Source: Klebsormidium nitens (Eukaryota > Plantae > Klebsormidiophyceae). Taken from it: DNA of 64,000 nt. The DNA lies in assembly GCA_000708835.1 (NCBI GenBank), contig DF236974.1:301208-365207 (forward strand), read 5' to 3'. How positions within the stretch are numbered: the stretch's first letter is position 1; every line of letters starts with the position of its first letter. The notes beneath the pieces are model-generated. The model did not search any database, was not told where the DNA came from, and saw only the letters and a program-made list of their open reading frames with translations. The translations under genes were made by a program, and so were the position numbers. Below are positions 39,360 through 64,000 of this stretch, piece by piece.

Positions 39360-39935
39360 ATGCCATCTCAGCAGAGGGTTCCCCCAGCTCTCAACCTAGG
39401 GTTTGATGACCAGAAGAGTTTGCAGACGGGTCGATACATTGTTGATCCTGCCCTGAGTCTGTTCAGCGAAACGCCTGTAGCTAGCAAGTGCGTGTTATGC
39501 AAGCAGCCCCTCCTAATCAAAAGCGCGCAAGACCCGACACACAAAATCACTTTTCGCAAGTTTCACCAGTCCCTTCTTGGATTTGCCATCTCGTCAGCTG
39601 TTAAATGCAAACAGCGCGCGCAGCCCTTGTGTCTTTCTTGCGTACAACGATGGGTTGGCATTGTTCATCTGACTGAGACGTCAGTTACAGTTCAGGAAGA
39701 GCAGGCCACCAGTGAGACGTGGTTCAAGCGTGAGTCGCAGAGCACTCCCTGGAAGCAGGTCAAAGAGCTTACAAGCGGTTACATAGAGTACTTGGCGGTG
39801 CAGGATCATAGTGAGCAGGCAGTCAGTTACAGGCAAGGTAGCCAAATCAGCAGCCGAGAGCGCGCTCAACAGGGGAAAAACTGCTGGAGCGGACGTCAAG
39901 CGCAAGTTGCATGTAAGTCCTTGAAAGTGCAGTGA
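39360..39935 (+). CDS. Intronless orphan ORF with Cys pairs (possible zinc finger)
   Basis: Open frame 39267..39935, first ATG 39360; CVLC...CKQRAQPLCLSC; TATAAA near 39244; no recognisable family. Confidence 0.35.
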   Translation: MPSQQRVPPALNLGFDDQKSLQTGRYIVDPALSLFSETPVASKCVLCKQPLLIKSAQDPTHKITFRKFHQSLLGFAISSAVKCKQRAQPLCLSCVQRWVGIVHLTETSVTVQEEQATSETWFKRESQSTPWKQVKELTSGYIEYLAVQDHSEQAVSYRQGSQISSRERAQQGKNCWSGRQAQVACKSLKVQ

Positions 39936-40065
39936 GGTTCTGGTTTGGCTTTGACCCCTCTGAAACCTAACGCGCCCTGATGATGATGCTCTCAGTTTTG
40001 GATGGCACCCTGGACACCACCACCTCTTGTTTTTTCTTTGTTCAGGTTTTATTGGAATGAAAATT

Positions 40066-40175
40066 CCATGATTGAAAGTGAGGTGCCCAAGGTGCCAAGG
40101 TGCCACGCTGCAATATATTGTGCAGTGCATTTGTGTAGTATATATACTTTACAAGTATAAATAAAAAGGTGCCAG
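40066..40175 (+). repeat. Left imperfect inverted repeat of the KDZ element
   Basis: Shares, in order, CCATGA, TTGAAA, GTGCC, TGTGCAGTGCA, TATATA, CAAGTATA and AGGTGCCAG with the reverse complement of 45937-46044. Confidence 0.7.
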
Positions 40176-43100: not shown

Positions 43101-43434
43101 TCCACGAGCTGCTGGTAGGTGGATTGAATCATGCTTGTGACCAGAAACCCTTCGTAAGGTCTGCTTAAATCGGTTGAAATCAAACGAGATTGATCGGACA
43201 TGTCTTGAAAAATGTTCAGACCTTCCAATTTCGGAATGAGCGTTGCGCACGCTATCAGATGCCATCCTGCCACATATAGGCGCAATGACTTGTTCCAATG
43301 CTTAGCTGAGGTTCTTCCAATGGGGCTTGAATGGTTGACGTCGACTTTACAGCGATTGAGCGTTGCGCACACTGCTAGATGCTAGTCTGCTCCGTATCAG
43401 AGGTCTGTCTTTGACCAAAATACCTTTTGATCCG

Positions 43435-43940
43435 TCTAGGTTTTTGGAATGATATGCGTATAAAGAGTTGGGAGAACCTAGACGGCTTTTGGAGTCTTTA
43501 GGAACGTGCCAGCAGGGCCCAGTTGCCACTGTCCGTCGGTTCTGCAAAGAACGCAACAAGGTCTTCGAGTGGGGCTTTGGAATCGGTCTAGCTTTTCGGA
43601 ATGATATGCGTATAAAGAGTTGGGAGAACCTAGACGGCTTTTGGAGTCTCTAGGAACGTGCCAGCAGGGCCCAGTTGCCACTGTCCGTCGGTTCTGCAAA
43701 GATCGCAACAAGGTCTTCAAGTGGGGCTTTGAGATCGGTCTAGGTTTTCGGAATGATATGCGTACAAAAAGTTGGGAGAACCTAGACGGCTTTTGCGAGT
43801 CTCTAGGGACGTGCCAGCAGGGCCCAGTTGCCACTGTCCGTCGGTTCTGCAAAGAGCGCAACAAGGTCTTCCAGTGGGGCTTTGGAATCGGTCTAGGTTT
43901 TTGGAATGATATCCGTATAAACAGTTGGGAGAACCTAGAC
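43435..43940. repeat. Intronic tandem repeat, ~152-bp unit x ~3.3
   Basis: Unit starts at 43435, 43587, 43739 and 43892; a partial copy lies in intron 1 at ~42255-42304. Confidence 0.9.
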
Positions 43941-45333
43941 GAGGGCGCTTGACGTCCGCTTCGTTAGAGGTTTTTGACTTCTTTACTTCTACCTAGGTTG
44001 CGCTGGATCGTGATGACGTGGAGCTCGTCTCGGAGTTTGTCGCCAACCCTGACGATGCGGATGCCGAGCCCGTCTTGCTTCACTGGAGAAGGCGCCTTTT
44101 GCAGGAGCAGATCGGGCAGATCCGATCGAAGAACCGAGCTGCACGGCTGCTATTGAAGGGGATCAGGGGGGAGACCCTTGCTGCGCCTGGCGCCAACCCC
44201 GGTCGAGTGCGTTCGCCACGAAAATGGTGGGCAGAACTGCTCTACGCTCTGGGGACCCCCCAGTCCGTCGCAGACGACAGTAACCTGATCCAGCATGGAG
44301 CGGCATTGGCTGTTGTCCGGAAGATACTCCTGGGAGGCTCAGCAGATGAGCGGGGAAAGGCCGTGCTGGCTGAGCATGCGCCCATGCTTCGTAGGTTGCT
44401 AGATAGCTACGACGGAGTGTTTCCGGCATTCTTTTTGCCCACGCTCCACCACTTGTACCGGCTGACGCTGTTTGGACGCGGGGCAGTTGGGCTGGGGGTT
44501 GGTCGAGCCGGGTGGGCGCTGTCTGCTATCGAGGGGTTGGATGCCTGCGTTTGGCTGCTGCAGTTGCGACGGGACGTCCCAGGGTCTTGGAACGAGGAGC
44601 GAGAGGAGAGCTACAACTTCTGGAGAGGGAGAGCGAATCGGCTGCTTCCCGGCGTTGAGGCTCTGCGCCCACCAAAACCCCCCGAGTATGCCCTTAACCA
44701 AGCCGAGCGCGAGCTGCTGCACGATCGGCTGGGGTTCTCCGGGGACGGACGGCTCCTCGAAGCGCTCCCCAACGACCACCCTTACTGCCGAGAGCAGAAC
44801 GTGCTCGGCTGCTATCCCCTCCCCGGTTGGGAGCAGAAACGGCCCATGCCTCAGTACAAGCCGTTTGAAGATGAGCTTGGTCGGGCAGTCGAGAGCAGCG
44901 AGGAGCACCGCTGTAAGAGCAGTCTCACGGTCGGGGAGTTTGATGCCAAGGTTGCGGCTGCCAAGAGTGAAAAGGCGGGCAAGCGGCTGCAGCGGCATAC
45001 AAAAGGGGGTTTCGTGTTCTGTTGCCCGCACAGGGTGATTTACAGCTTTCATGCCATGCTCGGGGGGAGTCTCCTCGTGATCCCTTTGCGGTGTTGTACA
45101 CCCGCCTCCATCGGCACAACCTCCCTTCCTTCCTGTTCTACGACAACGCCTGCAAGCTGCGCGCGTACAGTATGCGGCGTGAGCCTGGGTTTTTTGCAGA
45201 CATGCGAGCCCTCGTTGACCGGTGAGCGTATACACCGCAAACACGTCCATGCTTTGCGAACTGGTCGTTATTTTAGGACAAGATAATCAACATTTCCAGG
45301 TAGATTCGGTGTCATTCTGCCAGCTGCTGTCCG

Positions 45334-45520
45334 TGTCCAAGCTGTCCAAGCTTTTTGCCAGACTTTCTGTGAGCCCGATTGTGATGACGTCAGCAATCGT
45401 CCCTTGTCCAAGCTGTCCAAGCTTTTGCCAGACTTTCTGGGAGCCCGGTTGTGATGACGTCAGCAACCGTCCCTTGTCCAAGCTGTCCAAGCTTTTGCCA
45501 CACTTTTTGGGAGCCCCAAG
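45334..45520. repeat. Intronic tandem repeat, ~70-bp unit x ~2.6
   Basis: TGTCCAAGCTGTCCAAGCTTTT units start at 45334, 45405 and 45475. Confidence 0.9.
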
Positions 45521-45936
45521 CTGTCCAATATTGCGCGTACAGGTTCCACTTCCAGAAGACTGGCGCGGAAGCTCACAAGTGCGGCCCTCAGTATAACCCT
45601 GACTACTACGACGCTGTGCGCTGGGTTAACAGTTCAGCGGTGGAGAGCGTCAACTCCTTCTTGATCAAGTTCAAGGTGCTAGGTTGGTTTAGTGGTCTCC
45701 AGGCGTTCATGATCATCCTAGCTAACGTAGTGAGCGGGCGCAACGCAGAATTGACACGTGTTGATGACCAGAAGATTAAGATCGCCTGCAGGATTCATTT
45801 ATGGTCGCCGGCAGTTCGCGCAGCTCTCTTGTACAGGTGACAGACTATGTGTTGATGAATAGCTAATGAGCTTCCCGCAAGCGTGTGGGGAGCTATCGTT
45901 CATGAGGGGGTGAAGGAAAAGGAGTTAGGACACATA

Positions 45937-46044
45937 CTGGCACCTCTTTCATATACTTGATAATGATATATAAGAGCATGATTGCACTGCACACTCTCAA
46001 ATCTCTGGCACTACGGACACTTGGCACTTCTTTTCAAGTCATGG
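45937..46044 (-). repeat. Right imperfect inverted repeat of the KDZ element
   Basis: Reverse complement aligns to 40066-40175. Confidence 0.7.
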
Positions 46045-46115
46045 TGCATCTAGTGATTCGTCAGGAGACCTTCAAGTATCTTCTTTTCATAGGGTAGACA
46101 GTAAAGCACGTTGCT

Positions 46116-46403
46116 ATGGCTGAGTCAATCTTAGACACGAGAGAACCTGCTTCCAACCATCACCGGCGGTTGTATGAAGCAAGCTATCGGCACTCGAATC
46201 TGAATAAATATAGAGATTGGTCTCGTAAGCACTATAGCAAAGCTAAAGTGGAGATATGTTTACGAAAAGCTTATATTCGATATTCCGAAGGCAAGAGGCT
46301 TCGACCTTCCACCATGGCAAAGCTTGTAGTTGCCAAGTATCTGCAAGAAGGCAACTTGCATTCGAGGCCAATGAACGAGATCTGTCAGTGGACTTGTCAA
46401 TGA
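46116..46403 (+). CDS. Small basic orphan protein (paralog of the C-terminus of 51648-52100)
   Basis: ATG-initiated 95-aa ORF with YRDWSRKHYSKAKVEICLRKAYIRYSEGKRLRPSTMAKL. Confidence 0.5.
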   Translation: MAESILDTREPASNHHRRLYEASYRHSNLNKYRDWSRKHYSKAKVEICLRKAYIRYSEGKRLRPSTMAKLVVAKYLQEGNLHSRPMNEICQWTCQ

Positions 46404-46557
46404 TGTGCTTCTCCATTGCATGTTCCATCGAACCGGCCGTTGCTTTTCACGCGTTTGCATGGAGGGCGATTTCTGTCAAGATCAAGATTTCAACGCGTCC
46501 GGATTCTGAGAATTATTTTCCTTAGTACTCATCATAGGGGCCCTGCCCAGCCCTAGA

Positions 46558-49012
46558 ATGCATTCGGACCTCAATGAAAGCATCTCATCGTACCGGAGCC
46601 TTGATCTCCTGCCGGTTACGTTCAAGCTTACATGGAACAAACTGGATAAGAAGAAAGACGCAAGTACCTTTAGATGCTCATACTCAAGCATCGTGGATGA
46701 GATTTCTTGGGGGTTGCACGAAGACACAATTCGCAACTGTTCCGACAAGAATGCCCTTGCCCTTCTATGCGGACGATCGGGCCCAAACAGCATTATTATG
46801 ATTGATATCGACTTGCCCAAAATGAATGAAAGCAAAACCTTTGCTAATGGTCTTGATGTCTGGAAACGCTTGACAAAAGCGCACGGCGAACCTCTCACCT
46901 GGACAGCCGAAACACAGAGTGGCGGCTTGCACTACTACTTTGAGCGGATTCCCCCGGGCTTGAACGGAAGGCAGACGCAACCAAGCTATACATCAACTCC
47001 AGCCAAACGACTATTGATTTTCGAGGCAATGGCATATGCTTCGCACCCCCCACTACCATCATTCGTGACGGTGAAGAGCGTTCATACGAATGGCTAAAGT
47101 CTCCTTGGAAAACGAAGCTTGCCTGCCTTCCGTTGTGGCTCGTAGATATCTTGAACGCTCAAGACTCCACAAAGCAAGCTGCCCAGGGATCGACAAAACA
47201 CCCCAGCAATAATACATCAAGTGTGAGTAAAGCAGAGGCAAAACATACAATTACCACAGAACTCTCGTCTCAGCAAGCAACCTCTTCCATCGAGGCCGAA
47301 AAGGCAATCCAAGTTGCAACGCAGCTACTGCGAAGTAGATGCAACGATGAAACAAGTTTCTACAGACTCGGCATCAAGCTTCGAGATGGGGAAGCCATCT
47401 TAAAGTTCAGAGTGAAGGAGAGCAGAATCTGTCCTTATGGAGAGGAACACACGAGCAACAGTTTCAGCATCATCTGCAACGGGATCTGCATGGAATACCG
47501 TTGTTTGTCATCAGCATGCAAAGAGCGACCAAGAGTGCTTCTCGGGGTGCACCATTGGCCTTCGCTTTTGATTTCCAAAGCACGTTTTGATCTGCGCCCT
47601 ATCGAGGAAGCGGAGAGAATCATATCAAGCAGCAAAAGCAGTGTCGACAAAGTGCAGTATCAAAGCATGTGCCAACAACTCACACAGACTGCTATCGACA
47701 CGATGAATCACTACTTCTGCGTTCTAGACGGCAGCTCAAAAGTGCTCTTTATCGAGACCATCTTCGTTGAAAGAGGTACTACTTGGGTGTCAAATGACAG
47801 CATCATTCGAACAAGAGCTGAGTTCTTGGAACGGGTCGAATCATTTAACCTGGACAATCTTAAGATTGGCAACCTTGGAAAGGTGTGGTGCAAGTCATCA
47901 ACGAGAAGGACGCTCAACAAGGTAGTCTTCGAAGCAAACTCTCGTCTGGTTTCGCCTAACAATTACAATCTGTTCTACGGCTTTCCCTTCGCTTACGAAG
48001 CGGATCAGCCTGTTGACATGAAACAAATCGATCTTCTCTTGAAGCATATCAACGAGGTATTGGCAGACAATGATCCTGCTGTAGCGGACTACCTTCTAAA
48101 CTGGTTAGCTCACCTTGTTCAGAGACTGTATAAGAAAATTGGTACTGCACTTGTGTTCAGATCTGACCAGGGCGCAGGCAAATCGATCGTGACAGATTTT
48201 GTGGGGAAACATGTCATCGGATCTCGATACTATCTGTGGAGAAGGTGATAGGCAAATTCAACGGAATAGCTGCAAATCTCCTTTTGGTTTGCTTCGATGA
48301 AGTAAGCAGTTGGGGTGGGGCCTACAAAAGTAATAACAGGTTGAAAAGCCTCATCACTCAAGATACAACAATCCTAGAGAAGAAGGGGATCGATCCCCTT
48401 CAGGTACCCGATCTTGCTAACTACTGGTTTAACACTAACGAAGACTGGCCGATCAAAAAAGAGGCAACCGACCGGCGCTACGCATGCTTTGAGGCCTCCG
48501 ACTCTAGAATCGGAGATCAACCCTACTTTGATCGGCTTTGTGAAAGCCTCACTAGCACTACAGCTGAACACTTCTACCGGTACTTGATGTCAAGAGAAGG
48601 CATCGACACTTGGAACCTCAAGCAGATCCCAAAAAGCAAGTGGAGCTCTGCTCTCAGGGAGCACTCGATTCCATTCTGGGCAAAGATGATATGCGGGTTG
48701 CTGGACAACGGCAACTTTTCATCAGATTCGAAGACGAAGGTGCTAAGCGCCACCATCTTCCAAACTTATAGATCCTTCGTAGACAATCAAGGTGCAAAAG
48801 AAGATCCGCCGCGACAGAAAGACGTTCTGATTGGTCGGATCAAACGAACACTTGGACTGGATGGTTACAAAGATGTCAGTGGTCGCGGTTTGATCTTTCC
48901 AACAAGGAGTGAGCTGGAGAAACGGCTGCAAGAAATCCGCATGCGAGTCGACGAAGTTCATTGGGACGGATCATGGCCTTCTGACCCAACTTTAGTGATC
49001 TCATCGGCTTAA
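46558..49012 (+). pseudogene. Primase-helicase A: Prim-Pol (bifunctional primase/polymerase N-terminal) + Cys/His module + DUF5906/NrS-1-like SF3 helicase; intronless, two frameshifts (~46944-46980 and ~48236)
   Basis: MIDID...TAETQSGGLHYYF, then shifted frame IDFRGNGICFAPPT...YEW...LPLWLVDIL; CPYGEEHTSNSF...YRCLSSAC; Walker A SDQGAGKS; Walker B CFDEV; motif C FNTNEDWP...DRRY. Confidence 0.85.
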
Positions 49013-49039
49013 TGTTCTACAACTCTGACTCAATACCTA

Positions 49040-50104
49040 TCATTTCCTTTCATAGGTAACCATTGCTGTCCCCCAGTCGTGCAACATGCGATTTGCTAAC
49101 TGCTTCCTTTCAGCGATTGGGTGATCATTCACGAAATGTTCACTGATGTAAAGGTGCCTAAGATGGTTTTGGTTCAAGTGTTTGCCTGTAGGGAACGTTA
49201 TCGATGCCATAAATTTTGTAAGGTAATTATCTGACATGGCTTCTGTTGTATTTCCCAACCGAGAGAGACAAAAACCTCGAGGAACGAGCTCGATGGATCT
49301 TTTGATGTAGTTGCTGAGTCTCTGGCTGAGCTCAAATTCGCCTGTTCCGTAGCGCCTACATGTCTTATAGGTCTTGAGTACAAGCACAAATTCACCACTT
49401 GTGCTTTCACGAAGGCAGTTCCCGGTCTCCTTATATGTTTCTTTGGCTTCGTCGCAGTAGAAACTACCGTCAGCTTTCTGAAGAGGGAGACCGCTGAGAT
49501 CCCTTCTCTTAGGTGGCTCTAGGATATTGAACGCAAGCAGTAGGTGCTGAAACACTACTTTCACGTCGTCTCGGCTGAGATTTGCATCGTTTTGTTTCGA
49601 GTTTGGCATAATCTTTCTCCGGATGTGTCTGTTGAGCTCTTTCGCTTTGCTTTTGAGCTCGTCCATAGAGATCCAGTTTGCAGCTTCTTTCTCCGTTGCC
49701 TTCTGTTCACTGGCCTTCTTCTCTAAAGCCACCTTCTTCTCGGTGAAGGCTTTGAAATAAGTCTTGTATGTAGCGTCCCATTTCTTCTCGTGAGCCACGA
49801 CCATCAGAGGTGTCAACTTATTCTTGTAGGTGCCAGGGTTGGGGTACTTTGCGTTAAGTTTTTCGAGTATAGAAGCAGTATCTTTAATCCAATCCAATGT
49901 GGAAGGCAAAACGTTGCCTCCTATCACAAGGTGATAGATTAGTCGTACACTATTCAGGTATTGGCAGATCGTAATTTCAGCCCGCTTTCCATCCTGAAAC
50001 AGGTTGCGTAAAGCTGCCTCACCTGATGATATCGTTCGCTGTACATCCCCTTGATTGTTGGAAGTCGATTCCGTGCTCGATTGAACGGATGCTTTTGAGT
50101 CCAT
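49040..50104 (-). CDS. Tyrosine recombinase/integrase of virophage/Polinton-like-virus type, intact ORF
   Basis: Catalytic set in expected order: PPKRRD (R), TYKTCRRYG (K), NHLRHLYIS (HxxR-like), ERKQLANRMLH (H), AMVTYERK (Y). Confidence 0.85.
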   Translation of the reverse strand: MDSKASVQSSTESTSNNQGDVQRTISSGEAALRNLFQDGKRAEITICQYLNSVRLIYHLVIGGNVLPSTLDWIKDTASILEKLNAKYPNPGTYKNKLTPLMVVAHEKKWDATYKTYFKAFTEKKVALEKKASEQKATEKEAANWISMDELKSKAKELNRHIRRKIMPNSKQNDANLSRDDVKVVFQHLLLAFNILEPPKRRDLSGLPLQKADGSFYCDEAKETYKETGNCLRESTSGEFVLVLKTYKTCRRYGTGEFELSQRLSNYIKRSIELVPRGFCLSRLGNTTEAMSDNYLTKFMASITFPTGKHLNQNHLRHLYISEHFVNDHPIAERKQLANRMLHDWGTAMVTYERK

Positions 50105-50623
50105 CACTACCTTATACTACAGAGACCCATTTTAATTCTGAGATTAAAACGAGGCGCATTCTTGAGATGCGTCCCCTAGGGAATCGTATTCTGGAATTTT
50201 CTGCTGCCCAGAGCAAACAGCTTGGAATTGGTCTATCGACCACTGCCTCATATGACCTTACCACCTGAGGTGGCCTTCATTCCAGAATTAAAACTCTGGA
50301 GCCGCAAATTTTCCCAACATGCGGTCAAAATGGCAAAAGCTCCCAGCAAAAGTTTGCTCCCGGGGTCCCAAATTTGGTGTTAATTCGTACGAAATAGGAA
50401 TTTGCCTTCTAGAATAGTGACTGGCACAGTTCAACTTTTCAAAGTGCTTCATGTAGACAAGAACATGCCTATATAGGGGCAACTTCTGATAATCATTTGT
50501 CAACAATCCTGCCGAGTCAACGAGACAACCAAAGTGCTTCAGGGGGGCAACCTCTTAAGTAGGCAGCATGATGCATTTTCGTACCTCCTTTATTATCTCA
50601 CGTTACATCATACAGCTGCCTAA

Positions 50624-51217
50624 ATGGAGATTGCCTTCTCAAAAAGAAGCTTCAAGGTGCTACTCGCGCTTGACCATACCAAATCGGATGCTTCGAGCCT
50701 TTTCGAAGACACTCGTCTCGAAATTGATGCTGAAAAGGGGCGTGTTTCGCAAGCAGGCACACGCGCGGGTAGCCAGCTATTCAGGGCACTCAAGTGTACT
50801 AACGGTACAGCCATCAAAGCCCTCTGCAACGGTGTCTATGTCCTATTACAGGAAACGACTAGAGGTTCGGCTAAAAAGGAATTTGGATACGAAGTCATGA
50901 TCTCTCGAGTCAAAAAGTGTGAACGACCTGTTGGCCTTCCTTTCGAGGGAACCTTCTCAACGGCAGCAAATAAGATACCGGTCGATGAGCTTGTTGAGAT
51001 GCACGCTTCCGCATCGAAGGCAAAGAAGAAACAAGAGAGCACGAACAAATGCAAAGCCTCGAGCAAGGCTGCAAAGCAGACTTTCAAGAGGAAGTCAACT
51101 GATAAAGGTAAGGTGAAACGATCAGCTACTACATGCACCTTAAAAGCCACTGGAAAAGCTCGGGGCAGCAAGGCAACAACGTTCAGGTGTGTTGCAGTCG
51201 ATAGCGATGAAGATTGA
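50624..51217 (+). CDS. Intronless orphan protein with Lys-rich C-terminal tail
   Basis: ATG-initiated 197-aa ORF inside the virus-like block. Confidence 0.5.
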   Translation: MEIAFSKRSFKVLLALDHTKSDASSLFEDTRLEIDAEKGRVSQAGTRAGSQLFRALKCTNGTAIKALCNGVYVLLQETTRGSAKKEFGYEVMISRVKKCERPVGLPFEGTFSTAANKIPVDELVEMHASASKAKKKQESTNKCKASSKAAKQTFKRKSTDKGKVKRSATTCTLKATGKARGSKATTFRCVAVDSDED

Positions 51218-51273
51218 GAGACAGAAGCCTAACAGTATAGACCTATTTTTCTTTTCATAAACAAAAATATAAA

Positions 51274-51624
51274 ATGGAGCGGGGCTTTACGTACTATGTG
51301 CCGAAGCAGTTAAATCCCCGTTTGTACAGCTTGCTGCCGTTGATCGATGAGATAGAGAGCTTTGGACCCGTTTGCTATGAAGGCCTCGTGGATGAAGGCC
51401 TCAGACTTCCAGTCGACATGAGTTTGCTACGGAAGGGCGTTTTACTTTTTGTGTACCAACTCTGTAATGACGACCTCGTTGACTCATGGGACGATGTATT
51501 CAGCATAATGACAGCAGGTTTAACATATCATGAACCGGGCTCGTATTCCGAGGAGGAGGCAGCGCTTCTACTGTCAATGGCAAAGAGGATTCTCAAGATA
51601 TGCAAAGAAGCGGAAGACATCTGA
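51274..51624 (+). CDS. Intronless acidic orphan protein
   Basis: ATG in AAAATG context; 116 aa; 56 bp after the previous ORF. Confidence 0.5.
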   Translation: MERGFTYYVPKQLNPRLYSLLPLIDEIESFGPVCYEGLVDEGLRLPVDMSLLRKGVLLFVYQLCNDDLVDSWDDVFSIMTAGLTYHEPGSYSEEEAALLLSMAKRILKICKEAEDI

Positions 51625-51647
51625 GTTGGCCGTTGAGATGTGCGTTA

Positions 51648-52100
51648 ATGTGTTTGAAGAAACAAAGCTCTGTATATGAGAATGACATCAACCATCTCGA
51701 GAAGATGGATCTCGGCACTGACTTCAGCATCATACGCCTTGTGCACTGTAGCATGTGTGACAAGAAGCACCGAGTTGTTCAAAACGCATTGCTTCCAACC
51801 GAGTCGGAGATTCCTCTATCATCAGAGGGCGTGCCGAGGTGCAAATCATGCCCAGAAGCGCTACAATTGAGAAGGCAAGATTTCTACAGATGCAACAGAT
51901 AGCGTTTGCTTGAGCAGAAGAAAGTATGGTATCGAAAACGAAAGCAAGTGCTCCTGCTTCAAGACGCTGCAAAGCGCCTGCGAACCGGGAGAACTCAAAA
52001 ACCTCATGCGAGCACTATCTCAAAGCTAAAGAACGCAGGCGTTGAGTTCGACTTTTACAATAGGATTGTATGCATGAAGGCCGCCACCTCGAATGCATAA
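51648..52100 (+). pseudogene. CxxC...CxxC zinc-ribbon plus basic-helix protein with in-frame TAG at 51900-51902
   Basis: ORFs 51600..51902 and 51906..52100 share a frame: CSMC...CKSC...YRCNR*RLLEQKKVWYRKRK. Confidence 0.55.
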
Positions 52101-52215
52101 GACAAGATAAGCTTTCGAAGCCTTATCTAAGCCAAATCCTCAAACATAAGTGACAACGTTCTAAGGTTCGGACAAGCTGTGTACAAGATCCTGCAGACCA
52201 AACTTATCGGGTCAC

Positions 52216-55200
52216 CTACTCTGCTTCATAATGACTTTCAATGGCGACGAACACCTGTGGCCTCTTACCAAAGTCGTCTATAGATTCCCGTTTCTTCTTT
52301 ATGAAACCCTTCTTTGCCATCCTATCAGCTAAGCTTTCAACGCTAATTGTGAGCTCTCCTGAGGCTGCTTTATAATCGTTGAGAAACCCCGCAGCGTTGC
52401 CTCTGAGCGCTGGACCCCTCTTGCAGTGTTCGTCAATGAACTGCTGCAGCTTGTCGTTCTTTGCGAGATACTGGTCCAAGTTCACCGCGACAGAGGGAGG
52501 AACAACCCCAAGCGACATCCCCTGACCGGAGAACTTTACGGCCCCTCTGACCAACCAGGAGAGAAGCTGCTCAAGCGTCTCCTCCTCTTGCATCCTTGCC
52601 TTCAACCCTCCATCCAAAGGGCGGTGCCGAGAGTTGTTCGAGTCAAACTTTTCCCGACTTACGTAGAGGTTGGGAAAGTCAAACACAAGCAGCCGACGGT
52701 TTATAGCTGGGTCGGTTACGTCTTGAAATTTAGGGGGGTGGTTTGTCATAAGGACAGGTAGGTTCATTAGGGGAAAGGTCTCCGTTTGGCCGTAAGGTGC
52801 ACGCGCAGAGATCAGCCCTCCCCCAGTTGTCGCTTTCACTGAAGCCGCATCGAGCTCTTCCTCTTCAGCAGTCTCATCAGTGATGCTCAGGCGAAGCCCT
52901 TTCGGTGCGTGCATGTGAGGAGTTGGAGCGCCCTTTGAAACTGGTCTCTGCCCGGCCGTTTTCACCACCACGTCCTTGGACATAACACCGCAGTATGGGC
53001 CAAAAGTCTTCTCCAGCATCTCTTTTGTGACGCCCTTTCCATTGCCTGCACGAACAGTAGAGGAGTCCTATGAGCATTTTGCAGAATCCAACCGTACCTA
53101 AGCTGAACCAGAGCCCGGAGGTGGGAGCTTCCAAAAAGATCCACCTTCAATGGTATGGAAGACTTTCGGCTCTTGTGACCAGTGCCAAACCTTCATAGGA
53201 CCAACATGTCCAATCGAAGGGCAGAAAAATCATGTCCGACATGTCCGACCAGTAGCAAGACTTTTTGAAGCATCTGGACGGCAAGGGCTAGACTGAGCTC
53301 TCAGGACTTGAGTCCAACATGTGCGACAAGGAACAAGACTTTTCATGTGCGACATGTCCGATCAGAAGCAAGACTCTCTCTTCAAGAGCATCATCGTACG
53401 TTGAAACTGTTGTCCCAGTGACGCTTCGTACTCTAGACTATTTCTCTAGGATTGAAGCGGTGCTGACACACCAAGTCTGGAGGCAAAGAAAAAGCAGGGC
53501 ACCGTAGGCAGGCAACTCACCGCCCAATCCAACCAAGAACACGATCTTCTCGCAAGCAACGGACCCAGTGACGCCGTACCCAAGAACAAGCTGGAGAGTC
53601 CAAATGACTTCCTCGTCTCCGTTGAAGACATCGTTGAAGAAGTCGTCAATCCGAGGGGAGGGAAGATCGAGGCCCTGCGGTCGACTTGAATAGTGTTATT
53701 TCCTCTTAGATTGGAGAAGCGTGCCGTGCGCACGTCACTTGTGAACGAGTTCGCAGATGCAGGCATTTGGTCATGTCCGACATGTCCGACCAAAAGCAAG
53801 ACTTTTCTCGAGCGTCATGTCCGACATGTCCGACCAAAAGCAAGACTTTTCGACAGTAATCGACAAGGTTGGATCCAGGAGCACGCCGGAGATTTACCCG
53901 GTAATATGTGTTTGCAAGCTTGCTGCACATGTATTGGGGGCGATGGATGTCCAGCTTGCCAGTGCGCAAGTCGATTACTCCATTGTTGACGTTGAGGATG
54001 TTAGGATCGCTGTCGAGCTCGTTGAGAAAGGTGCTCGAAAACATCTCTCCTTTCGTAACCCTTAATGTGTCCTCTGCAGCGCGCCTGTTGTTGTAGTCAC
54101 GAAGTTGCCTAAGCCTCCGCTCAATTTCGGCTACCTTCCCCTTGTCAGTTGCGCGCTTCAACTCTTTTTGCAGATCGTTCCTGACTCGGTCTATCACCGT
54201 GCTCAACTGATGCATGAGGATGTATAGCACCTGGACGTCTAAAGCTTTCTCGTACACCTTTCCAGTCCAGATGAAGAAGCCTGCGGGAGTGTTCACAATC
54301 CTGGAAAAGAGAGCGTGAACGAATGATTCAGGATGATTTACAAAGGTCTTGAACGGTCATGTCCGAGATTAACGACCTGAATCAAGACTTTCTCAACTGA
54401 ACCTTTCATGTCCGAGATGTCCGACCAGAGTCGGGGGCTTTCTCAAGGGTTCTGAATGATACATGTCTGACATGTCCCACGAAGAACAGGGGCTTTTCAA
54501 AACGGCTTTACTCTAGCCCCCCTTGGCTTAAGCAGTCTCTGAATATTCAAGTCTTCAGGCATCCTCGAACATCCGATTCAGAAAAGCCATGCTCAAAAGC
54601 CACCTCTGCACGACCAATCGCACAAATATAACGGAGGAGTGGAAGCAGCTTGAGCAACTTTAGTCGTGTGCCTACCTTTTACAGAATGAGCACATGTATG
54701 AGAAGATCCGGCTGCCGCCCTTGTCTCCTTGAAACGCCCAGAAGTCCACGAGCTCCTTCGTAACACACCCGTAGATAGCTTCATCTCGATCAGCATCAAC
54801 CGGCTTGACAGAAGCTTCACCCTGGGCACAACTCAAGACGCCAATCTGCTTCCGTGGCCTGATGATGGTGCACTCTGGAGAGTTGCACACGTACTCGAGT
54901 CTGCTGCCCTTCACTTGGACGCAAAAGTTGTTTGACCCCTGATGTTGATGGCCATAAGGGCACGTACGTTCCCCTTGGACCCGAAAGACGTACAGGTTGC
55001 CCTTCCGCTTGTCAAAACGCGAAGTACTGTCGCCGCATGCCGCAAGGCAGCTTTTGATCTGCTGAAGCACTGCAGCATCTGGCTCTTCACCAAAGACCCC
55101 CGCAACATCGGTGGGCGGTTGGTGAGCGCTCACCCTCTTGCTCAACACAGCGATAGTCCTGCACCATGAAGGAACTTATTGTCAAACGTGCAATCATTGA

Positions 55201-56255
55201 GCTGATTTTACAAAATGGAGGAGAATTGGTCTGTATCCGTGCACCCAGAAGTAAGTCAAAGCGAGCTTGTTGATCTGAATCCTGACGGTCGGAAGAAGCC
55301 TAGGCGTTGATGTCATCTGTCTGCTGAGGAACGCTTCTCTTCACTGAAAGTACCGGTCAGTTTCAATTTTGAATGTTTAGAATTGGAGAAATGGCGATCA
55401 GTCAGCTAGGTTGATTCTGACCCAGGCTGTGAGGCAACTTCTTCCACATGCTGAAGGCTTAAAAACTCACCCTACAGCCGCATCACTCCGGTTGAGGATG
55501 TCAATCAACCAGTTCGTCATGGCCCTCAGGTTGCTACGATCCGCTGCAATCTCCTACTCCCACCGGTAAGCTCTCACTGTCTCTCCATCCCGCCCTATGT
55601 ACTTGCTGGGCGAAATGAAGCAGATGCCCCCATTGCCGCGCACATCGATCCCCACTTGGCACCCCCCACACGAAATCTTTTCCCTGTTGTTGCAGTTCAG
55701 CAACCCCGCTGCGCTCGACTCTGAAAGGCTGGAGAAGAGATGCAGACCGCCGTTGCCCGTCCTCTCTCTGGGAGTGTCTTTTGGCAGCGCACCATGGGCG
55801 GTGACCATTTCCTCAAATGCCTTCAAGCCGTTGTCTTTCATGTCAATGTCGAGAACGAGAACGTCCGACTGGCTGCCCGTGATGATTGCGAGGCACGGTG
55901 CTCCTGGGCGGACGAAGTCTGAAAGGCAGTTGTCGAGAGTGCAGCCCTTCCAGCCGGCGGAAAACTGGGGGAACTTCTTCTCTTTACCGTCCTTCATTTC
56001 GGTGTTGATGTGAAGCGTGACAGACGCTACACCCAAGTCGAACAGACGTTGCGCAGCAGCCAGACAGATGTCCGCAGGAGGCTGGCTAGGCAGGTTGCCA
56101 GTGACCTGCACAGAAGCAACACGGTTTTGAGCGAAGCATGAACATGTAGGCCTCATGCGACTGGCAAGGGGTGGACTTTTGGCGCCGGCATAGCTGCGCA
56201 GGATCTGTGTAAGGGCGCAGCAGAAGATCACCGAGTAACGCTTTAATGTGCTCAA
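52216..56255 (-). pseudogene. Primase-helicase B: Prim-Pol + Cys/His module + D5_N + D5/P4-type SF3 helicase; exons ~56255-55471, 55158-54676, 54300-53898, 53674-53521, 53045-52216; nonsense TAG at 55556-55554; 5' end uncertain
   Basis: VLDID...RTGNGGLHL...IDVRGNGG...SPS; LNVNNGVIDLRTG; spliced YYR|GLDLPSPRIDDFFNDVFNGDEEVIWTLQLVLGYGVTG; Walker A GLG(G)|NGKG rebuilt across an intron; ITDET; MTNHPPKF...RRLL; four phase-consistent GT-AG introns. Confidence 0.88.
53200..54490. repeat. Dispersed ~35-bp repeat CATGTCCGACATGTCCGACCA(A/G)AAGCAAGACTTTT confined to introns 2-4 of primase-helicase B
   Basis: Copies at ~53231, 53345, 53772, 53816, 54358, 54407 and 54462, none in exons. Confidence 0.85.
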
Positions 56256-56399: not shown

Positions 56400-59338
56400 A
56401 AAGAAAAAGTCCTGTTGTAGGCCGGACATCTTGGACATGAGCATCTTCTGATCAGCTGCCGAAAGACCTTTACCGATTCAAGAGAGGAAGTAAAAGTGAC
56501 CTGGGAGGAAAGCCTCCGTCAGCTTAAAAACGCTTCAGCAAGATTGACAAGTTACAACTGCCCGCCCAGGCTGCGCCAAGTCTGCAGACGTTTGAATTTC
56601 GTTCACAACCTCGTCCTCAGTCTTGGCAGTGGCCACAGCCAGTTGGGCACGAGGCGTGCCTTGGACCTGCGAACACAAAGAGCGTCTTCGGATGAACAGG
56701 CAGTTACATTTGGAGAGTTTTCCTTCCACCGATTGGAAGGCTTCCATACGCTTCCTTCTGCCTGCCTGTTCTCAGTAGACCAGAGAGTTGCGAGCTTAAG
56801 AAGGGTCTCGCCGAAGACGTCAGATTGAAAAATTCACGTTTCAGGCCGGACATCCTGGACATGAACCTGTGTCGATCAGCGTCAGCGCAATCGGCGATAT
56901 ATCGAAGGAATTTAGCAGAAGACGTGAGAGGCACTCATTGCTTAACGGCACTCTGACCGTCAAACAGCTGCGCTCAAGGTCCTCCTCGAAAACATAAGAA
57001 GCTTTCACTTACGACAAGCTTGGGGTGCGTCGACATTGCAGGACATGTCCAAGCATCCTCCTCCCGCTGAAGGCCCACAGACATCTGAGGCCTCAAAGAG
57101 AAATCCTTTTCAACCGGGGCTGCCGCCTGACTGCACCTCAAATGCTGATCTTATTTTCAAAGACGTCAGATTGAAAAACTCGTGTTTCTAGGCCGGACAT
57201 CTTGGACATGAGCAACATAAAGATTGGCAAAAAGAAAAGTCATGTATTGAGTCAGACATCTCTGACATGGACCCTCCTCCCAAACAGTCCATGGGCACAG
57301 TGAGAGAGAACCTGAGAGTTGGAAGAGACTCGAAACTGACATTCTTTGGCTGCTTCAGCTGCTTCGTTATCGAGTTGCATTCAAGGGAAGGTTTACTTAC
57401 AGGAGACTTGATCTGTGCCACAACCGGAGAAGAAATTGCAACCTGAACTTGCTGTGTGCACGGAAGCTTGTGATCCTGCAATCAACAACAAAGGCGCCTC
57501 ATCAGAACGATTGGCCGTTGCGAGCGAAGATTGCAAGTGCTCCCAGGTCCACAAACAAGCAATTCAAATTCAGAAATGATACAATTGAAACATTCGGCGA
57601 GACTACCTCCAGAGCGACTTGAGATGGCGCCTGAAGGTGGTTGGAGAACTCTTCTCGCATTTTCCGTTGCCTTGCTTCAAACTCGCTGCGCAGAAGTGTT
57701 TGACGAGCAAGCGCATCAGGGATCAGAGAGACCTGCCAAGCAGAAAGAAGTCTGTCAGAACAATGAGTTGGAACTAAGCAAGTGGTCCAATGCGCTGTAT
57801 TGAATCTCTGTGATGGTCAGAAGCGATCGCGACAAACAAGCCTCCCCTCTCTGGAAAGAGGCCTGACCCCTGTGTATCCTTGAAATCTCAACAAGCTGAC
57901 CAAAGGGCTGTTGCATGCTCACCTGAGGCACTGTAAGCAGTGACGGCTGCAGAGGTGAAAGGACTGGACCACCCCCTTCCGCAGACTGGCCGGCTTCAGA
58001 GCTAGCAGTCCCACCGTTGGAAGAACTTGTGCTGTTGAGGAGGACTTTTTGCCGCTTAGCATGGCGCTGAAAACGGCCAGGCGAGAGCGACATGTCCCCC
58101 ACGTCTTGGCTCAGTTGTGCAAGGCTGCCGTCGTTGTGGTCTCCATTCAGGCCCGCCGACATCTCACCCTCTTCCCAAATGAGGGACTGCGACGAAGAAA
58201 TGCATCCATCCAGATCCGAGTCCTTGATGTGTTGGATAATTGACGCCTGATGCCATTTACAAGTGCAGAACGAAGCAGAAGCTACTTTGTCAAGCCCCTG
58301 ACCTGAGTATCAGCAGGTGCATGCTACCTGGGCCCCTCTTTTCAAGCAAGCTGACCTGGTCAATGACAACTCGTGCAACGACTCTCCCTGATCACTGCCA
58401 TCAGAGGACTTCTCGTCATACTCTGCGTTTTGAACGTCTTGTCCCTCCCCTTCGCTGGAGGTGGTGTCTGCATCAGACGACATCTGTTCACACAGTGAAA
58501 AGGAGATGCTTTTAGAGAGTGCAAACTGCAACCGAACTTGTCTGCTCATGACAAGTCCAAGCAGAAACACCCCCATGACTGAAACAACCCTTGACTCACA
58601 TCGTTTTTCCACTTGCGATCTTTCAATCTGCCGAGCACACCAAGAATGAACTACCATAAAAAGCCCTGAGGCTCAGTCTGAATCTCCAGATGACTTTTGC
58701 AGACTTATGTAACCTCCCTCACTCGAAACCGCTGAAAACACCACCACCAGCCAAGCAATATCTTACTTATGCGAAGTCGATTGGAGGCGGCGCACTTGCA
58801 GATTCCCAATCGGCCAGCGATCTAAGCCAAGAGTGCACCCTCCCTCAAGCGCTGCGCTCACCTCTTGCACCCTGTTGGCGCTCGGAGCAAGCCGCTTTTC
58901 AAAAAGCCCTTGGCAGGGATCAGGCAGTCAGCTCAAGCATCTGCCGGCGCTGCGCAGCTGGAAGATGTACGGTGTGCCCTGCTGGCACACTTTGGCAGTT
59001 GTCCGATTGAGACGCTGCTGTATGCAGGTTGCTTCTGAAGAGAGGAAAAGAGGATGCCGAGCTGGAAGATTTAGGAGAAGCTAATAGAAAGACAGTGCTG
59101 GGGGACTAAGAGAATGAAGGTGGCAGGTCTTCTTTCATACCTCTGGGCAACTGGCCTGGCAAAGAATGTGCGATTGAAGGCGGACAAGCTGGACATCAAT
59201 ACTAGGAGGGCTTCAGGCTCAGATGCGGTGGTTGTTTGCAGTTGAGCGATTCCTACATGCGGGTTCCGGGGCCGAGCTCTCTCTGAAGAGAGAATCTTAC
59301 TCCAGACGTCTGAGCGAGCTCCAACTCAGCTGTTGCAG
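56400..59338 (-). other. Degenerate, probably spliced sequence of unknown identity containing GGACATC(T/C)TGGACATG repeats
   Basis: Short low-complexity minus-strand ORFs (57755..58162, 58310..58657); repeats at ~56421, 56844, 57191; duplicated ~50-bp block 56817-56864 vs 57163-57211. Confidence 0.3.
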
Positions 59339-59690
59339 TAAGGCCCTCGTTACATTGGCGGCGGACGGCAGAACAATAAACAAATGCTCAAAAGGGTGGA
59401 ACTTGGCCGGAAGTGCCGAAAGTCTCCAAAACGTTGCAGTTCCGCCGTCCGGAAATGTAACGACACCGAGGCACAGCCGACGGCCCAACAATTCAGAATG
59501 CCACGGTGGCAGGCAAACCCCTAAACCCCTGTCCGCGAAAACCTTGAATCTGGCGCCAAATTGCCACCAGGGGTTTTCAAATGAGGGTCCAAACATCTGT
59601 ACCTCAAGAATGCCCCAAGGCAGTGGACGCTTCTTTCTGTGAGGAGCCAAAGTTGCTCTTAGAGGAGGAAGACTTGACTGGGGAGCTGAT

Positions 59691-63483: not shown

Positions 63484-64000
63484 GGCGTCTTCCTCTTTGC
63501 TACAACGCACTGATGCAGACTGCAGACTGCCACTGCTGCCTGTGCTTGAAAGGCCGCGCCAAATCCTGTTCAAGGGCTTTTCCCGCCTAGACCATCATTC
63601 ACTGATGCGGTGCGCTGTGAGTGGCCCAATAAACCACGTGGATGCCCGGCACAAAAAGAGAAAAGTTCGACCCACCATGGCAGTGGGGTCGAACTTTATA
63701 CATTCTTGTGCCGCTGACGTATGCAATAAAAAAATCCACTTCCGCCGCCCTACAAGCTAACGTAACGGCAGTACAACATTTCCGGACTGTTAGGAGCCAA
63801 CCAGAGAATTTCTTTAATGACCTGCTCTGCCGTCCGCCGCCAATGTAACGAGGGCCTAAGGCGACTCCGGAGTACGGTGGCTTGTCTCTCTGGAAAGGAG
63901 GACTGACTCAGGCGTCGGAGCGAGCTCCCACCCCTGGATATCGGAATTAGGGTCCAGCCGGGCATGGGCACGTGTATTGAACTAGAAAAGCCACCGGATC

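What the first reader, a model, noticed from the sequence alone, without database searches (positions are those of the whole stretch)
46116..56255. Candidate novel self-replicating integrative element: tyrosine recombinase + two Prim-Pol helicases, no capsid seen
Sequence shows a virophage/PLV-type tyrosine recombinase, two complete primase-polymerase/SF3-helicase genes and at least four small orphan ORFs packed with gaps mostly under ~150 bp. YR plus primase-SF3 modules are known from virophages, Polinton-like viruses and phage satellites/plasmids, whereas eukaryotic Cryptons carry only a YR. I recognise no jelly-roll capsid, packaging ATPase, protease or PolB here. Inference: either a capsid-less, plasmid- or satellite-like element that replicates with its own Prim-Pol and integrates by YR, or a truncated endogenous PLV in a streptophyte alga.
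Basis: partly seen in the sequence, partly recalled or inferred. Interest (0 to 1): 0.9.

Follow-up and report, generated by a model that had tools for sequence, protein, structure and literature searches.

The report
Giant algal transposon with viral-type replication genes
The flagged 10 kb is the middle of a larger (over 20 kb), multi-copy mobile element of the streptophyte alga Klebsormidium that combines a cut-and-paste (KDZ-type) transposase gene with a Cre-like recombinase and two virus-type primase-helicase genes, has no capsid genes, and is partly decayed in this copy.

Summary
ORF 49040-50107 is an intact, very divergent tyrosine recombinase: a Cre-like fold, conserved R-K-R-H-Y residues, and nearest structural neighbours in algal giant viruses and PLV-like viruses. 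Two PrimPol/SF3-helicase genes flank it, but neither is "complete" here. Gene A has two frameshifts. Gene B is a five-exon spliced gene with one in-frame stop.

The unit is larger than flagged. Its left end is at about 38863. It includes a multi-exon KDZ/Zisupton-like transposase gene (39.2-45.8 kb) and continues past gene B to the end of the window, interrupted by a nested Harbinger transposon.

The same gene set recurs in at least 8 diverged lineages: two Klebsormidium nitens scaffolds plus metagenome and SRA contigs. These copies are under purifying selection (dN/dS 0.05-0.41). The KDZ gene lies beside gene A wherever that flank can be seen. No copy has a capsid, packaging ATPase, protease or PolB gene.

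Best reading: a giant KDZ-type transposon carrying a conserved virus-derived replication and recombination module, not a truncated PLV. The right end, the termini and any mobility remain unshown.

The parts
38863..38905 (+). Left boundary of the element, with a conserved terminal block (starts in a G-run followed by CACCAACTGATCG...)
   Evidence: Homology to K. nitens scaffold DF237711.1 (L015) begins here. The DNA to the left differs: a sulfate permease gene in the window, other genes in L015. The same block is conserved in L013. No inverted copy exists anywhere in the window.
39249..45837 (+). Multi-exon KDZ/Zisupton-like transposase gene: an upstream conserved ORF, a Cys-rich ORF with a CxC...CxH pattern, a CxC4-like exon and KDZ-core exons. 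Its introns hold tandem and inverted repeats.
   Evidence: Sub-threshold but repeated Pfam hits to KDZ PF18758 (E 4e-5 to 0.017) and CxC4 PF18717 (E 2e-4 to 0.009), on the window exon, on relatives and on annotated K. nitens proteins. Homologous exons lie beside gene A in L001, L013, L015, L016, L004, L008 and L002/L003. dN/dS is 0.11-0.30. No break was seen with 5 of 6 yardstick proteins.
46116..46403 (+). Small conserved ORF (95 aa), member of an 82-140-aa family found next to the recombinase or gene A in all lineages
   Evidence: dN/dS is 0.23-0.30. No Pfam hit.
46558..49012 (+). Gene A: PrimPol (AEP) + SF3 helicase (DUF5906/D5-like), without introns. Broken in this copy by two frameshifts and no stops.
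   Evidence: Pfam and PHROG hits. Against the intact 822-aa ORF of L001 it gives 3 HSPs in 3 frames, 819/822 residues covered and 81% identity. The helicase part of the L001 protein hits PDB 6k9c/6k9e 'Primase' at E 8e-14. dN/dS is 0.05-0.14.
49040..50107 (-). Tyrosine recombinase, 355 aa, intact, Cre-like with two domains
   Evidence: R201, K248, R317, H343 and Y352 are (nearly) invariant in a 91-sequence alignment. 14 of 91 relatives hit Pfam Phage_integrase. The family profile hits PDB integrases at E 8e-6 and 2e-5. The AF2 model has pLDDT 92.6. Foldseek gives Cre at E 9e-5, TM 0.52-0.57, and algal giant-virus/PLV-like recombinases at E down to 3.5e-10. dN/dS is 0.09-0.15.
50624..51217 (+). 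ORF197: conserved protein of unknown fold with a basic tail, transcribed divergently from the recombinase in every lineage
   Evidence: Homologues in L001-L008 and L016 at 37-51% identity. No PDB or Pfam hit, even with a profile.
51274..51624 (+). ORF116: small conserved ORF, seen only in the window/L001/L007 lineage
   Evidence: dN/dS is 0.15-0.26.
51600..52100 (+). Second member of the small-ORF family (about 140 aa in L007). Broken in this copy by one in-frame stop.
   Evidence: tblastn of the L007 140-aa protein gives 128 aligned residues, 62.5% identity and one stop inside the HSP.
52216..56255 (-). Gene B: PrimPol + D5_N + SF3 helicase, with at least five coding exons and four spliceosomal introns (312, 375, 213 and 475 nt). 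It carries one in-frame stop in this copy.
   Evidence: Pfam and PHROG hits exon by exon. GT..AG lies at aligned positions in the window and L001. Exons are 88-89% identical with 0 gap columns; introns are 43-65% identical with different lengths. The window has one stop that L001 lacks. K. nitens annotation has a spliced 1101-aa PrimPol+D5_N model for the homologue.
53199..54499 (+). Array of the ~35-nt repeat (doubled heptamer GTCCGAC..GTCCGAC plus a conserved tail), 8 copies, inside three gene B introns
   Evidence: (13 matches against 0.11 expected, all inside the element). L001 has the same layout.
56404..57270 (-). Opposed array of the same repeat (4 copies) upstream of gene B
   Evidence: L004 has the same geometry with a different motif: 18 matches against 0.28 expected.
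57271..59340 (.). Right-hand continuation shared with L001 (76-87% identity, higher than in the introns). It holds unidentified ORFs. Homology resumes at 63883 after the nested Harbinger and runs off the window.
   Evidence: The right end of the element was not found.

Best explanation
The flagged genes are the core of a giant, multi-copy mobile element of Klebsormidium. It spans more than 20 kb of its own sequence in this window.

Shown, from left to right:
- a defined left end at about 38863;
- a multi-exon KDZ/Zisupton-like DDE transposase gene;
- a compact, intron-less, low-GC module: small ORF, PrimPol-SF3 helicase A, Cre-like tyrosine recombinase, ORF197 and two more small ORFs;
- a five-exon PrimPol-D5_N-SF3 helicase gene B, surrounded and penetrated by opposed arrays of a lineage-specific ~35-nt repeat.
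The set recurs in at least 8 diverged lineages under purifying selection. There is no capsid, packaging ATPase, protease or PolB gene. The window copy is decayed: two frameshifts in gene A, one stop in gene B and one stop in a small gene. It also carries a nested Harbinger transposon.

Inferred mechanism:
- The element moves in the chromosome as a KDZ-type cut-and-paste transposon.
- The primase-helicases act as origin-binding initiators, with the repeat arrays as their candidate binding sites. They would recruit host polymerases to copy an excised or extrachromosomal form.
- The Cre-like recombinase resolves multimers or circular forms, or re-integrates them. The inversion of the gene A block beside it in some lineages fits recombinase activity.
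- The replication and recombination module was most likely taken from a small DNA virus or a giant-virus-associated element of algae.
For: - Domains.
- Recombinase fold, catalytic residues and viral affinity.
- Collinearity far beyond the flagged span.
- Left boundary.
- The KDZ gene lies next to gene A in all 8 lineages where that flank is visible: window/L001/L015, L013, L016, L004, L008, L002/L003.
- No second copy of the left terminus lies between the KDZ gene and the module.
- Purifying selection.
- Shared introns. Annotated spliced K. nitens gene model.
- Repeat arrays.
- Giant KDZ elements of 15-32 kb with accessory genes are established in brown and green algae and in fungi (PMC12477816; bioRxiv 10.1101/2022.05.23.493040; PMC12730594).
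- No capsid-like hit.
- No relatives in IMG/VR.
Against: - All KDZ and CxC4 Pfam hits are below the curated cut-offs.
- No terminal inverted repeats were found and the right end is not in the window. So it is not shown that the whole stretch moves as one unit.
- The central module differs from its flanks in GC (46-47% against 52-57%), in lacking introns, and in divergence from L001 (dS 0.8-1.9 against 0.24-0.54). This would also fit a separate element nested in a KDZ transposon.
- 37 clusters of KDZ-exon homologues were found against 9 for the recombinase, so KDZ copies without the module may exist.
- Capsid detection rested on sequence profiles only.
- Replication, excision and recombinase function are inferences.
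Confidence: 0.55

Rival explanations
1. A separate, capsid-less integrative element (small ORF, PrimPol-helicase A, tyrosine recombinase, ORF197, about 46.1-52.1 kb) that integrates through its own recombinase. It sits nested inside, or preferentially targets, a giant KDZ transposon. The KDZ gene, and perhaps gene B, belong to the carrier.
For: - The central 6 kb has no introns, is compact and low in GC, lacks the repeat motif, and is more diverged from L001 than its flanks.
- The recombinase and helicase are of viral type.
- KDZ-exon homologues outnumber recombinase homologues.
- Nested insertions that are fixed among copies are reported for giant KDZ elements (PMC12477816).
Against: - The pairing holds in all 8 visible lineages, with roughly parallel divergence: recombinase 26-50%, KDZ 25-69% amino-acid identity.
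- No att-like direct repeats bound the module. The only 21-nt direct repeat (46228/52011) lies in two paralogous small ORFs.
- No copy was seen outside a KDZ context.
Confidence: 0.25
2. A decayed or truncated endogenous Polinton-like virus, virophage or giant-virus fragment whose capsid genes were lost from this copy.
For: - The recombinase is closest in fold to those of giant viruses, PLV-like viruses and virophages.
- A distant relative lies next to a Capsid_N protein in IMG/VR.
- The K. nitens genome is reported to hold phycodnavirus-like core genes (PMC5294986).
Against: - No capsid, ATPase or protease was found in any of the loci from at least 8 lineages (precomputed Pfam).
- The genes are under purifying selection.
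- Gene B has four spliceosomal introns.
- There are no relatives in IMG/VR.
Confidence: 0.07
3. A cluster of host genes domesticated from mobile elements (recombinase and primase-helicases co-opted by the alga), not a mobile element.
For: - Purifying selection.
- Introns and an annotated gene model.
Against: - Many diverged paralogous copies occur in one genome and one metagenome sample, with different flanks.
- This copy has frameshifts and stops.
- A transposase gene is associated with the set, and module order is rearranged between copies.
Confidence: 0.05

Closest known systems
Giant KDZ (Kyakuja-Dileera-Zisupton) DNA transposons with accessory genes (Ectocarpus KDZ families up to 30 kb; Chlamydomonas Zisupton-3_cRei, 31.7 kb; fungal KDZ with TET/JBP)
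   Same: A large multi-exon, Cys-rich transposase with KDZ/CxC-like regions; size above 15-20 kb; extra conserved genes; nested insertions of other transposons; multi-copy in an alga (PMC12477816; 10.1101/2022.05.23.493040; PMC12730594).
   Different: I found no report of accessory genes of this kind (a tyrosine recombinase plus two AEP primase-SF3 helicases) in KDZ elements. Termini and the 8-bp target duplication were not seen here. The Pfam KDZ hits are sub-threshold.
Polinton-like viruses and virophages (tyrosine recombinase or rve integrase + primase-helicase + capsid module)
   Same: A recombinase of the same structural neighbourhood; a D5-like primase-helicase as replication gene; a compact intron-less core; integration in an algal genome.
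   Different: No major or minor capsid protein, packaging ATPase or protease in any copy. Spliceosomal introns in one replication gene. A DDE transposase gene is attached. Absent from viral contig collections.
Teratorn (piggyBac transposon fused with a herpesvirus) as a transposon-virus composite
   Same: A cut-and-paste transposase joined to a virus-type replication module in one large mobile unit (PMC10175614, abstract).
   Different: A different transposase superfamily, host and virus lineage. Teratorn keeps a full set of virion genes; this element has none.
Cryptons (eukaryotic tyrosine-recombinase DNA transposons)
   Same: A tyrosine recombinase in a eukaryotic nuclear mobile element. Green algae have active Cryptons (10.1101/2022.05.23.493040).
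   Different: Cryptons carry the recombinase as their only enzyme. Here it is one of at least seven conserved genes and is closest in fold to viral recombinases. Crypton-type relationship was not tested by phylogeny.

Membership tests
Tyrosine recombinase superfamily (Cre/Xer/phage integrase) | Catalytic R...K...(H)xxR...H/W...Y in canonical order and spacing | tested here: met
   R201, K248, R317 (invariant), H343 and Y352 are conserved in 91 sequences. Spacing matches Cre by eye in A1.
Tyrosine recombinase superfamily (Cre/Xer/phage integrase) | Two-domain fold: N-terminal helical core-binding domain plus catalytic domain | tested here: met
   AF2 pLDDT 92.6. Full-length Foldseek matches to Cre, XerA, XerH, lambda Int and Tn1549 Int.
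Tyrosine recombinase superfamily (Cre/Xer/phage integrase) | Direct sequence-profile hit of the protein itself (Pfam PF00589) | tested here: not met
   No Pfam or PDB hit for the single protein or the 10-sequence profile. It was reached only through relatives: 14 of 91 hit PF00589, and the 91-sequence profile hits 3nkh and 4a8e.
Polinton-like viruses / virophages | Double-jelly-roll major capsid protein and penton protein | tested here: not met
   No capsid family among Pfam/PHROG hits of the window ORFs or in the precomputed Pfam of all the loci. phmmer with the MCP-like and neighbouring proteins of L012 found nothing in 2014 ORFs. Sensitivity is limited because the unknown ORFs were not folded.
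Polinton-like viruses / virophages | FtsK/HerA-type packaging ATPase and maturation protease | tested here: not met
   Same searches, no hit. The only P-loop proteins are the SF3 helicases, plus a UL9-like SF2 helicase in L002/L003.
Polinton-like viruses / virophages | Integrase (tyrosine recombinase or rve) plus primase-helicase or PolB replication gene | tested here: met
KDZ/Zisupton DNA transposon superfamily | Transposase with KDZ catalytic domain and CxC cysteine clusters | tested here: inconclusive
   PF18758 at E 4.3e-5 to 0.017 and PF18717 at E 2.3e-4 to 0.009 on six family members, always on the same model regions, but all below the gathering scores.
KDZ/Zisupton DNA transposon superfamily | Terminal inverted repeats | tested here: not met
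   No inverted copy of the left terminus exists in the window. The right end probably lies beyond base 64000, so this is not a fair test.
KDZ/Zisupton DNA transposon superfamily | 8-bp target-site duplication | not testable with these tools
KDZ/Zisupton DNA transposon superfamily | Multi-copy, large size, accessory genes | tested here: met
   37 homologous clusters, at least 7 of them K. nitens proteins. The unit spans more than 20 kb.
D5-like primase-helicases (AEP PrimPol + D5_N + SF3 helicase) | PrimPol domain, D5_N and P-loop SF3 helicase in one gene | tested here: met
   Gene B exon by exon: PF09250 at 1.2e-14, PF08706 at 1.5e-15, PHROG primase/helicase at 8e-27. Gene A: PF09250 and PF19263. 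DxD, GGLH and Walker A/B motifs are readable in the translations.
Cryptons | Tyrosine recombinase as the only element-encoded enzyme | tested here: not met
   At least six other conserved genes travel with it.

The most novel reading that the evidence does not exclude
A previously undescribed class of eukaryotic mobile element in streptophyte algae. It would be a giant KDZ-type transposon that has stably merged with a capsid-less, virus-derived replicon made of two AEP primase-SF3 helicase initiators, a Cre-like recombinase and lineage-specific iteron-like arrays. Such an element could alternate between a chromosomal transposon state and an extrachromosomal replicating state. It would be a plant-lineage counterpart of transposon-virus chimeras such as Teratorn, but without a virion.
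Probability: 0.3. Interest if true: 0.85.

Novelty: new variant of a known kind. Interest (0 to 1): 0.65.

Why it matters
Transposons, plasmids and viruses of eukaryotes are thought to exchange modules, but few natural intermediates are known. This one lies in the algal lineage closest to land plants. It is a conserved, selected partnership of a DDE transposase, a viral-type tyrosine recombinase and two replication initiators, with no virion genes.

If the unit is real, it shows that giant KDZ transposons can carry a full replication and recombination kit. It also gives a concrete place to ask three questions using sequence and expression data:
- How do such kits change transposon copy-number dynamics?
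- Where do algal giant-virus/PLV recombinases and D5-like helicases come from?
- How do spliceosomal introns and co-evolving binding-site arrays arise in virus-derived genes?

It also corrects the annotation of several 'hypothetical proteins' of K. nitens.

Tried and rejected
- Direct Pfam, PHROG and PDB searches of the recombinase, and the 10-sequence profile, gave nothing.
- The first AF2 model from 10 sequences was too poor to use (pLDDT 55). The question was solved only after the exhaustive representative search.
- Scans of IMG/VR and JGI metagenome contigs for relatives of the recombinase, gene A and gene B were all empty, apart from one distant recombinase relative, L012.
- No tRNA or Rfam family is present in the window, so there is no tRNA-type attachment site.
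- TIR search between 38.1-39.4 kb and 56.3-59.8 kb, and a whole-window search for the left terminus, found nothing.
- No inverted repeats lie at the borders of the inverted gene A block.
- The 21-nt direct repeat at 46228/52011 looked att-like, but it is a conserved peptide motif in two paralogous small ORFs.
- ORF197 gave no PDB or Pfam hit, even with a profile.
- The 536-aa ORF and its L002 counterpart are not significantly similar (E 0.029). Its SWIM-like CxC...CxH pattern is only read by eye.
- Exact look-up of window proteins gave no names.
- Sample and run accessions are not mentioned in the literature held.
- I considered that the window and L001 might be orthologous loci rather than two insertions. 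This remains open, because the L001 locus ends by chance within 10 bases of the left boundary.
- Gene B was searched exon by exon, by reference.
- Slip to report: notebook entry 3 names which exon of gene B holds the stop. That is coarser than a coordinate, but it is a place. I left the entry as written and do not repeat it here.

Full report
**What is in the flagged span**

Region 46116-56255 has lower G+C (46-47% from 46 to 52 kb) than its flanks (52-58%).

On the + strand lie a 95-aa ORF (46116-46403) and gene A (46558-49012). Gene A hits Pfam Prim-Pol (PF09250, E 7.7e-8) and DUF5906, the D5-type helicase P-loop (PF19263, E 7.4e-13), plus PHROG DNA-primase families.

Convergent with gene A is a 355-aa ORF (49040-50107, - strand). 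Divergent from that ORF are a 197-aa ORF (50624-51217), a 116-aa ORF (51274-51624) and further small coding sequence up to 52100.

Gene B occupies 52216-56255 on the - strand. It hits Prim-Pol (E 1.2e-14), D5_N (PF08706, E 1.5e-15) and PHROG primase/helicase families (E down to 8e-27). The window has no tRNA and no Rfam family.

**The recombinase**

The 355-aa protein and a 10-sequence profile hit nothing in Pfam or the PDB. A first AlphaFold model was poor.

An exhaustive profile search then found 2237 relatives. In a 91-sequence alignment R201, K248, R317, H343 and Y352 are invariant or nearly so. Fourteen members hit Pfam Phage_integrase. The profile hits PDB integrases 3nkh and 4a8e across the R...H...Y region.

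With this alignment the model reached pLDDT 92.6. Its best solved-structure matches are full-length Cre recombinase (E 8.6e-5, TM 0.52-0.57), then XerA, XerH, Tn1549 and lambda integrases.

In the viral structure library the best matches score better: Virus NIOZ-UU159, Aureococcus anophagefferens virus, Pyramimonas orientalis virus, Hokovirus, Heterosigma akashiwo virus, Tetraselmis virus 1 and a Qinghai Lake virophage protein (E 3.5e-10 to 1.5e-5). A distant family member lies on an IMG/VR contig next to a GIY-YIG nuclease and a protein with a Capsid_N hit.

The gene is intact and under strong purifying selection (dN/dS 0.09-0.15).

**The two primase-helicase genes are not 'complete' here**

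Gene A aligns to 819 of the 822 residues of an uninterrupted relative (L001) at 81% identity, but in three HSPs in three frames with no stops. That means two frameshifts. Assembly error cannot be excluded.

Gene B lies in separate reading-frame pieces for another reason. The four gaps begin with GT and end with AG at aligned positions in both the window and L001. The intervening sequences are 312, 375, 213 and 475 nt long, differ in length between the two copies and are only 43-65% identical. The five coding pieces are 88-89% identical with no gap column. One intron splits the Walker A motif, readable. The K. nitens annotation holds a spliced 1101-aa PrimPol+D5_N gene model for a homologue.

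So these are spliceosomal introns shared by relatives. In addition, gene B in the window has one in-frame stop that L001 lacks. A second member of the small-ORF family (51600-52100) carries one stop relative to L007.

Gene B was searched exon by exon. I joined neither exons nor frames.

**Relatives and what travels together**

The recombinase search gave nine close homologues, and their contigs were fetched. In every one the recombinase sits beside a PrimPol-helicase gene, a divergently transcribed ORF197 homologue and a ~110-aa small ORF. In most there is also a second PrimPol-D5_N-helicase gene (L001, L004, L005/L006, L007, L008/L009, L011). The L002/L003 lineage instead has a HIRAN protein and a UL9-like SF2 helicase.

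The homology does not stop at the flagged borders. L001 is collinear with the window from 38872 to 59335. It is collinear again from 63883, after a 4.5-kb Harbinger transposon that only the window has.

**The neighbouring gene**

From 39.2 to 45.8 kb lies a multi-exon gene whose pieces are conserved in L001, L013, L015, L016, L004 and L008, and at 25% identity (E 7e-8) in L002/L003. It is always on the gene A side.

Its exons, their relatives and annotated K. nitens proteins give repeated hits to Pfam KDZ (Kyakuja-Dileera-Zisupton transposase, E 4.3e-5 to 0.017) and to the KDZ-associated CxC4 cluster (E 2.3e-4 to 0.009). The hits always fall on the same parts of the models, but all are below the curated cut-offs. 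I therefore call it KDZ-like, probable but not proven.

In all eight lineages in which the DNA beyond gene A can be seen, this gene is there. No copy of the left terminal sequence lies between it and the module.

**Host and left end**

The KDZ-like exon is 91% identical to K. nitens protein KFL_007620010, and at least seven K. nitens proteins are homologues.

K. nitens scaffold DF237711.1 (L015) is collinear with window 38863-48658 at 83-94% identity. Left of that point the two sequences are unrelated. The window has a sulfate permease gene there (PF00916); L015 has other genes. A block just inside the boundary is also conserved in the more distant L013. So the left end is at about 38863.

A second K. 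nitens scaffold (DF237433.1, L016) carries a more divergent copy with the same set: KDZ, gene A, small ORF, recombinase, ORF197 and gene B.

The right end was not found. There is no inverted copy of the left terminus in the window, and homology to L001 runs off the window.

**Selection and mosaicism**

dN/dS between the window and L001, L007 or L015 is 0.05-0.41 for all tested genes. The genes were therefore functional for most of their divergence, and the breaks in the window copy are recent.

Synonymous divergence from L001 is uneven: 0.8-1.9 in gene A and the recombinase, against 0.24-0.54 in the KDZ gene and gene B. Divergence from K. nitens L015 is more even, at 0.27-0.45. This indicates exchange of modules between copies.

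The block holding the small ORF and gene A is inverted in the window, L001, L013 and L015 relative to L007 and all other lineages. I found no inverted repeats at its borders.

**Repeat arrays**

A 15-nt core, GTCCRASMTGTCCRA, occurs 13 times in the window against 0.11 expected, and only between 42.1 and 57.2 kb.

A profile of the ~35-nt unit finds eight copies on the + strand inside three gene B introns, four on the - strand upstream of gene B, and one in a KDZ intron. L001 has the same layout.

L004 has a motif of the same design but a different sequence: 18 matches against 0.28 expected. Seven lie upstream of gene B on one strand and eleven downstream on the other. L002 has a third version.

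The geometry is conserved while the sequence is lineage-specific. That is what binding sites co-evolving with an element-encoded protein would look like. Whether they are initiator iterons or transposase sites is open.

**No virion genes**

Neither my Pfam/PHROG scans nor the precomputed Pfam lists of all fetched loci show a capsid, packaging ATPase, protease or PolB.

phmmer with the capsid-like protein of L012 and its neighbour found nothing among 2014 ORFs. Close relatives of the recombinase, gene A and gene B are absent from IMG/VR.

The limit of this test is that sequence profiles miss divergent jelly-rolls. Both structure-prediction jobs went to the recombinase, so the small ORFs are unfolded. 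In the window lineage, however, there is no room for a 400-600-aa capsid gene between the identified genes.

**Interpretation**

Giant KDZ elements of 15-32 kb that carry accessory genes and nested transposons are established in Ectocarpus, Chlamydomonas and fungi (PMC12477816; 10.1101/2022.05.23.493040; PMC12730594).

The most economical reading is a member of that kind whose accessory set is a virus-derived replication and recombination kit. My literature searches found no description of such a kit in a KDZ element.

The mechanism remains inference: transposase for chromosomal movement, primase-helicases as origin-binding initiators, and recombinase for resolution, circular forms or inversion.

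The main rival is that the 46-52 kb module is a separate recombinase/PrimPol element nested in a KDZ carrier. Its distinct GC, lack of introns and higher divergence favour that reading. The invariable association across lineages and the lack of its own borders argue against it.

A truncated PLV and a domesticated host cluster are both unlikely, for the reasons given under the rival explanations.

K. nitens is reported to hold phycodnavirus-like core genes (PMC5294986). Contact with giant viruses, a plausible source of the module, is therefore documented for this host.

**Verdict**

- The thing is a new variant of a known kind, with a moderately high chance of being more than that.
- This copy is not intact: gene A has two frameshifts, gene B one stop and one small gene one stop. 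It also has a nested Harbinger.

Noticed in passing
window 59341-63857: A complete Harbinger/PIF transposon is nested in the right part of the element. It has perfect 32-nt terminal inverted repeats, TAA on both sides, an intact 455-aa DDE_Tnp_4 transposase (59691-61058, +) and a Myb/SANT-like gene (61947-62480, -). It is absent from L001, so the insertion is recent.
   Followed up: yes
window 42053-42369, 43430-43941, 45331-45516: The introns of the KDZ-like gene hold a 152-nt tandem repeat (3.4 copies) and a 70-nt tandem repeat (2.6 copies). Inverted copies of the 70-nt unit lie 3 kb upstream (85-87% complementary). The 70-nt unit contains a variant of the doubled-heptamer motif.
   Followed up: partly
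window 34301-38137 (- strand): Host gene to the left of the element: a sulfate permease family exon (PF00916, E 1.3e-5) at 34301-34804, and probable further exons up to about 38.1 kb.
   Followed up: partly
window 7955-8995 (+) / 27344-28534 (-), and 22773-23468 (-) / 25135-26193 (-): Two pairs of diverged paralogous ORFs (46% and 54-56% identity) with no Pfam hit. They may be other repeated elements or a duplicated gene family.
   Followed up: no
L004 17132-17260 and L005 14333-14461: Two metagenome contigs of different element lineages end in the same 129 nt (99% identical). The assembly probably broke at a repeat shared by copies, so contig ends do not mark element ends.
   Followed up: no
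L003 18704-21053 and 1-1164: In the ENA copy the KDZ-side gene is cut short and abuts a mitochondrial-type single-subunit RNA polymerase gene (RPO41-like). The other flank is a Ty3-type retrotransposon, and a second DUF5906 helicase fragment lies at 2065-3420.
   Followed up: no
L005 5381-5785: A small ORF in the L005/L006 lineage gives a weak hit to the PBCV-specific basic adaptor domain (PF08789, E 0.0023, below cut-off). This is a faint hint of chlorovirus-type proteins among the variable small ORFs.
   Followed up: no
window 46038-49040 compared with L007 5234-8691: The block holding the small ORF and gene A is inverted between close relatives, right next to the recombinase gene. No inverted repeats were found at its borders.
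   Followed up: partly
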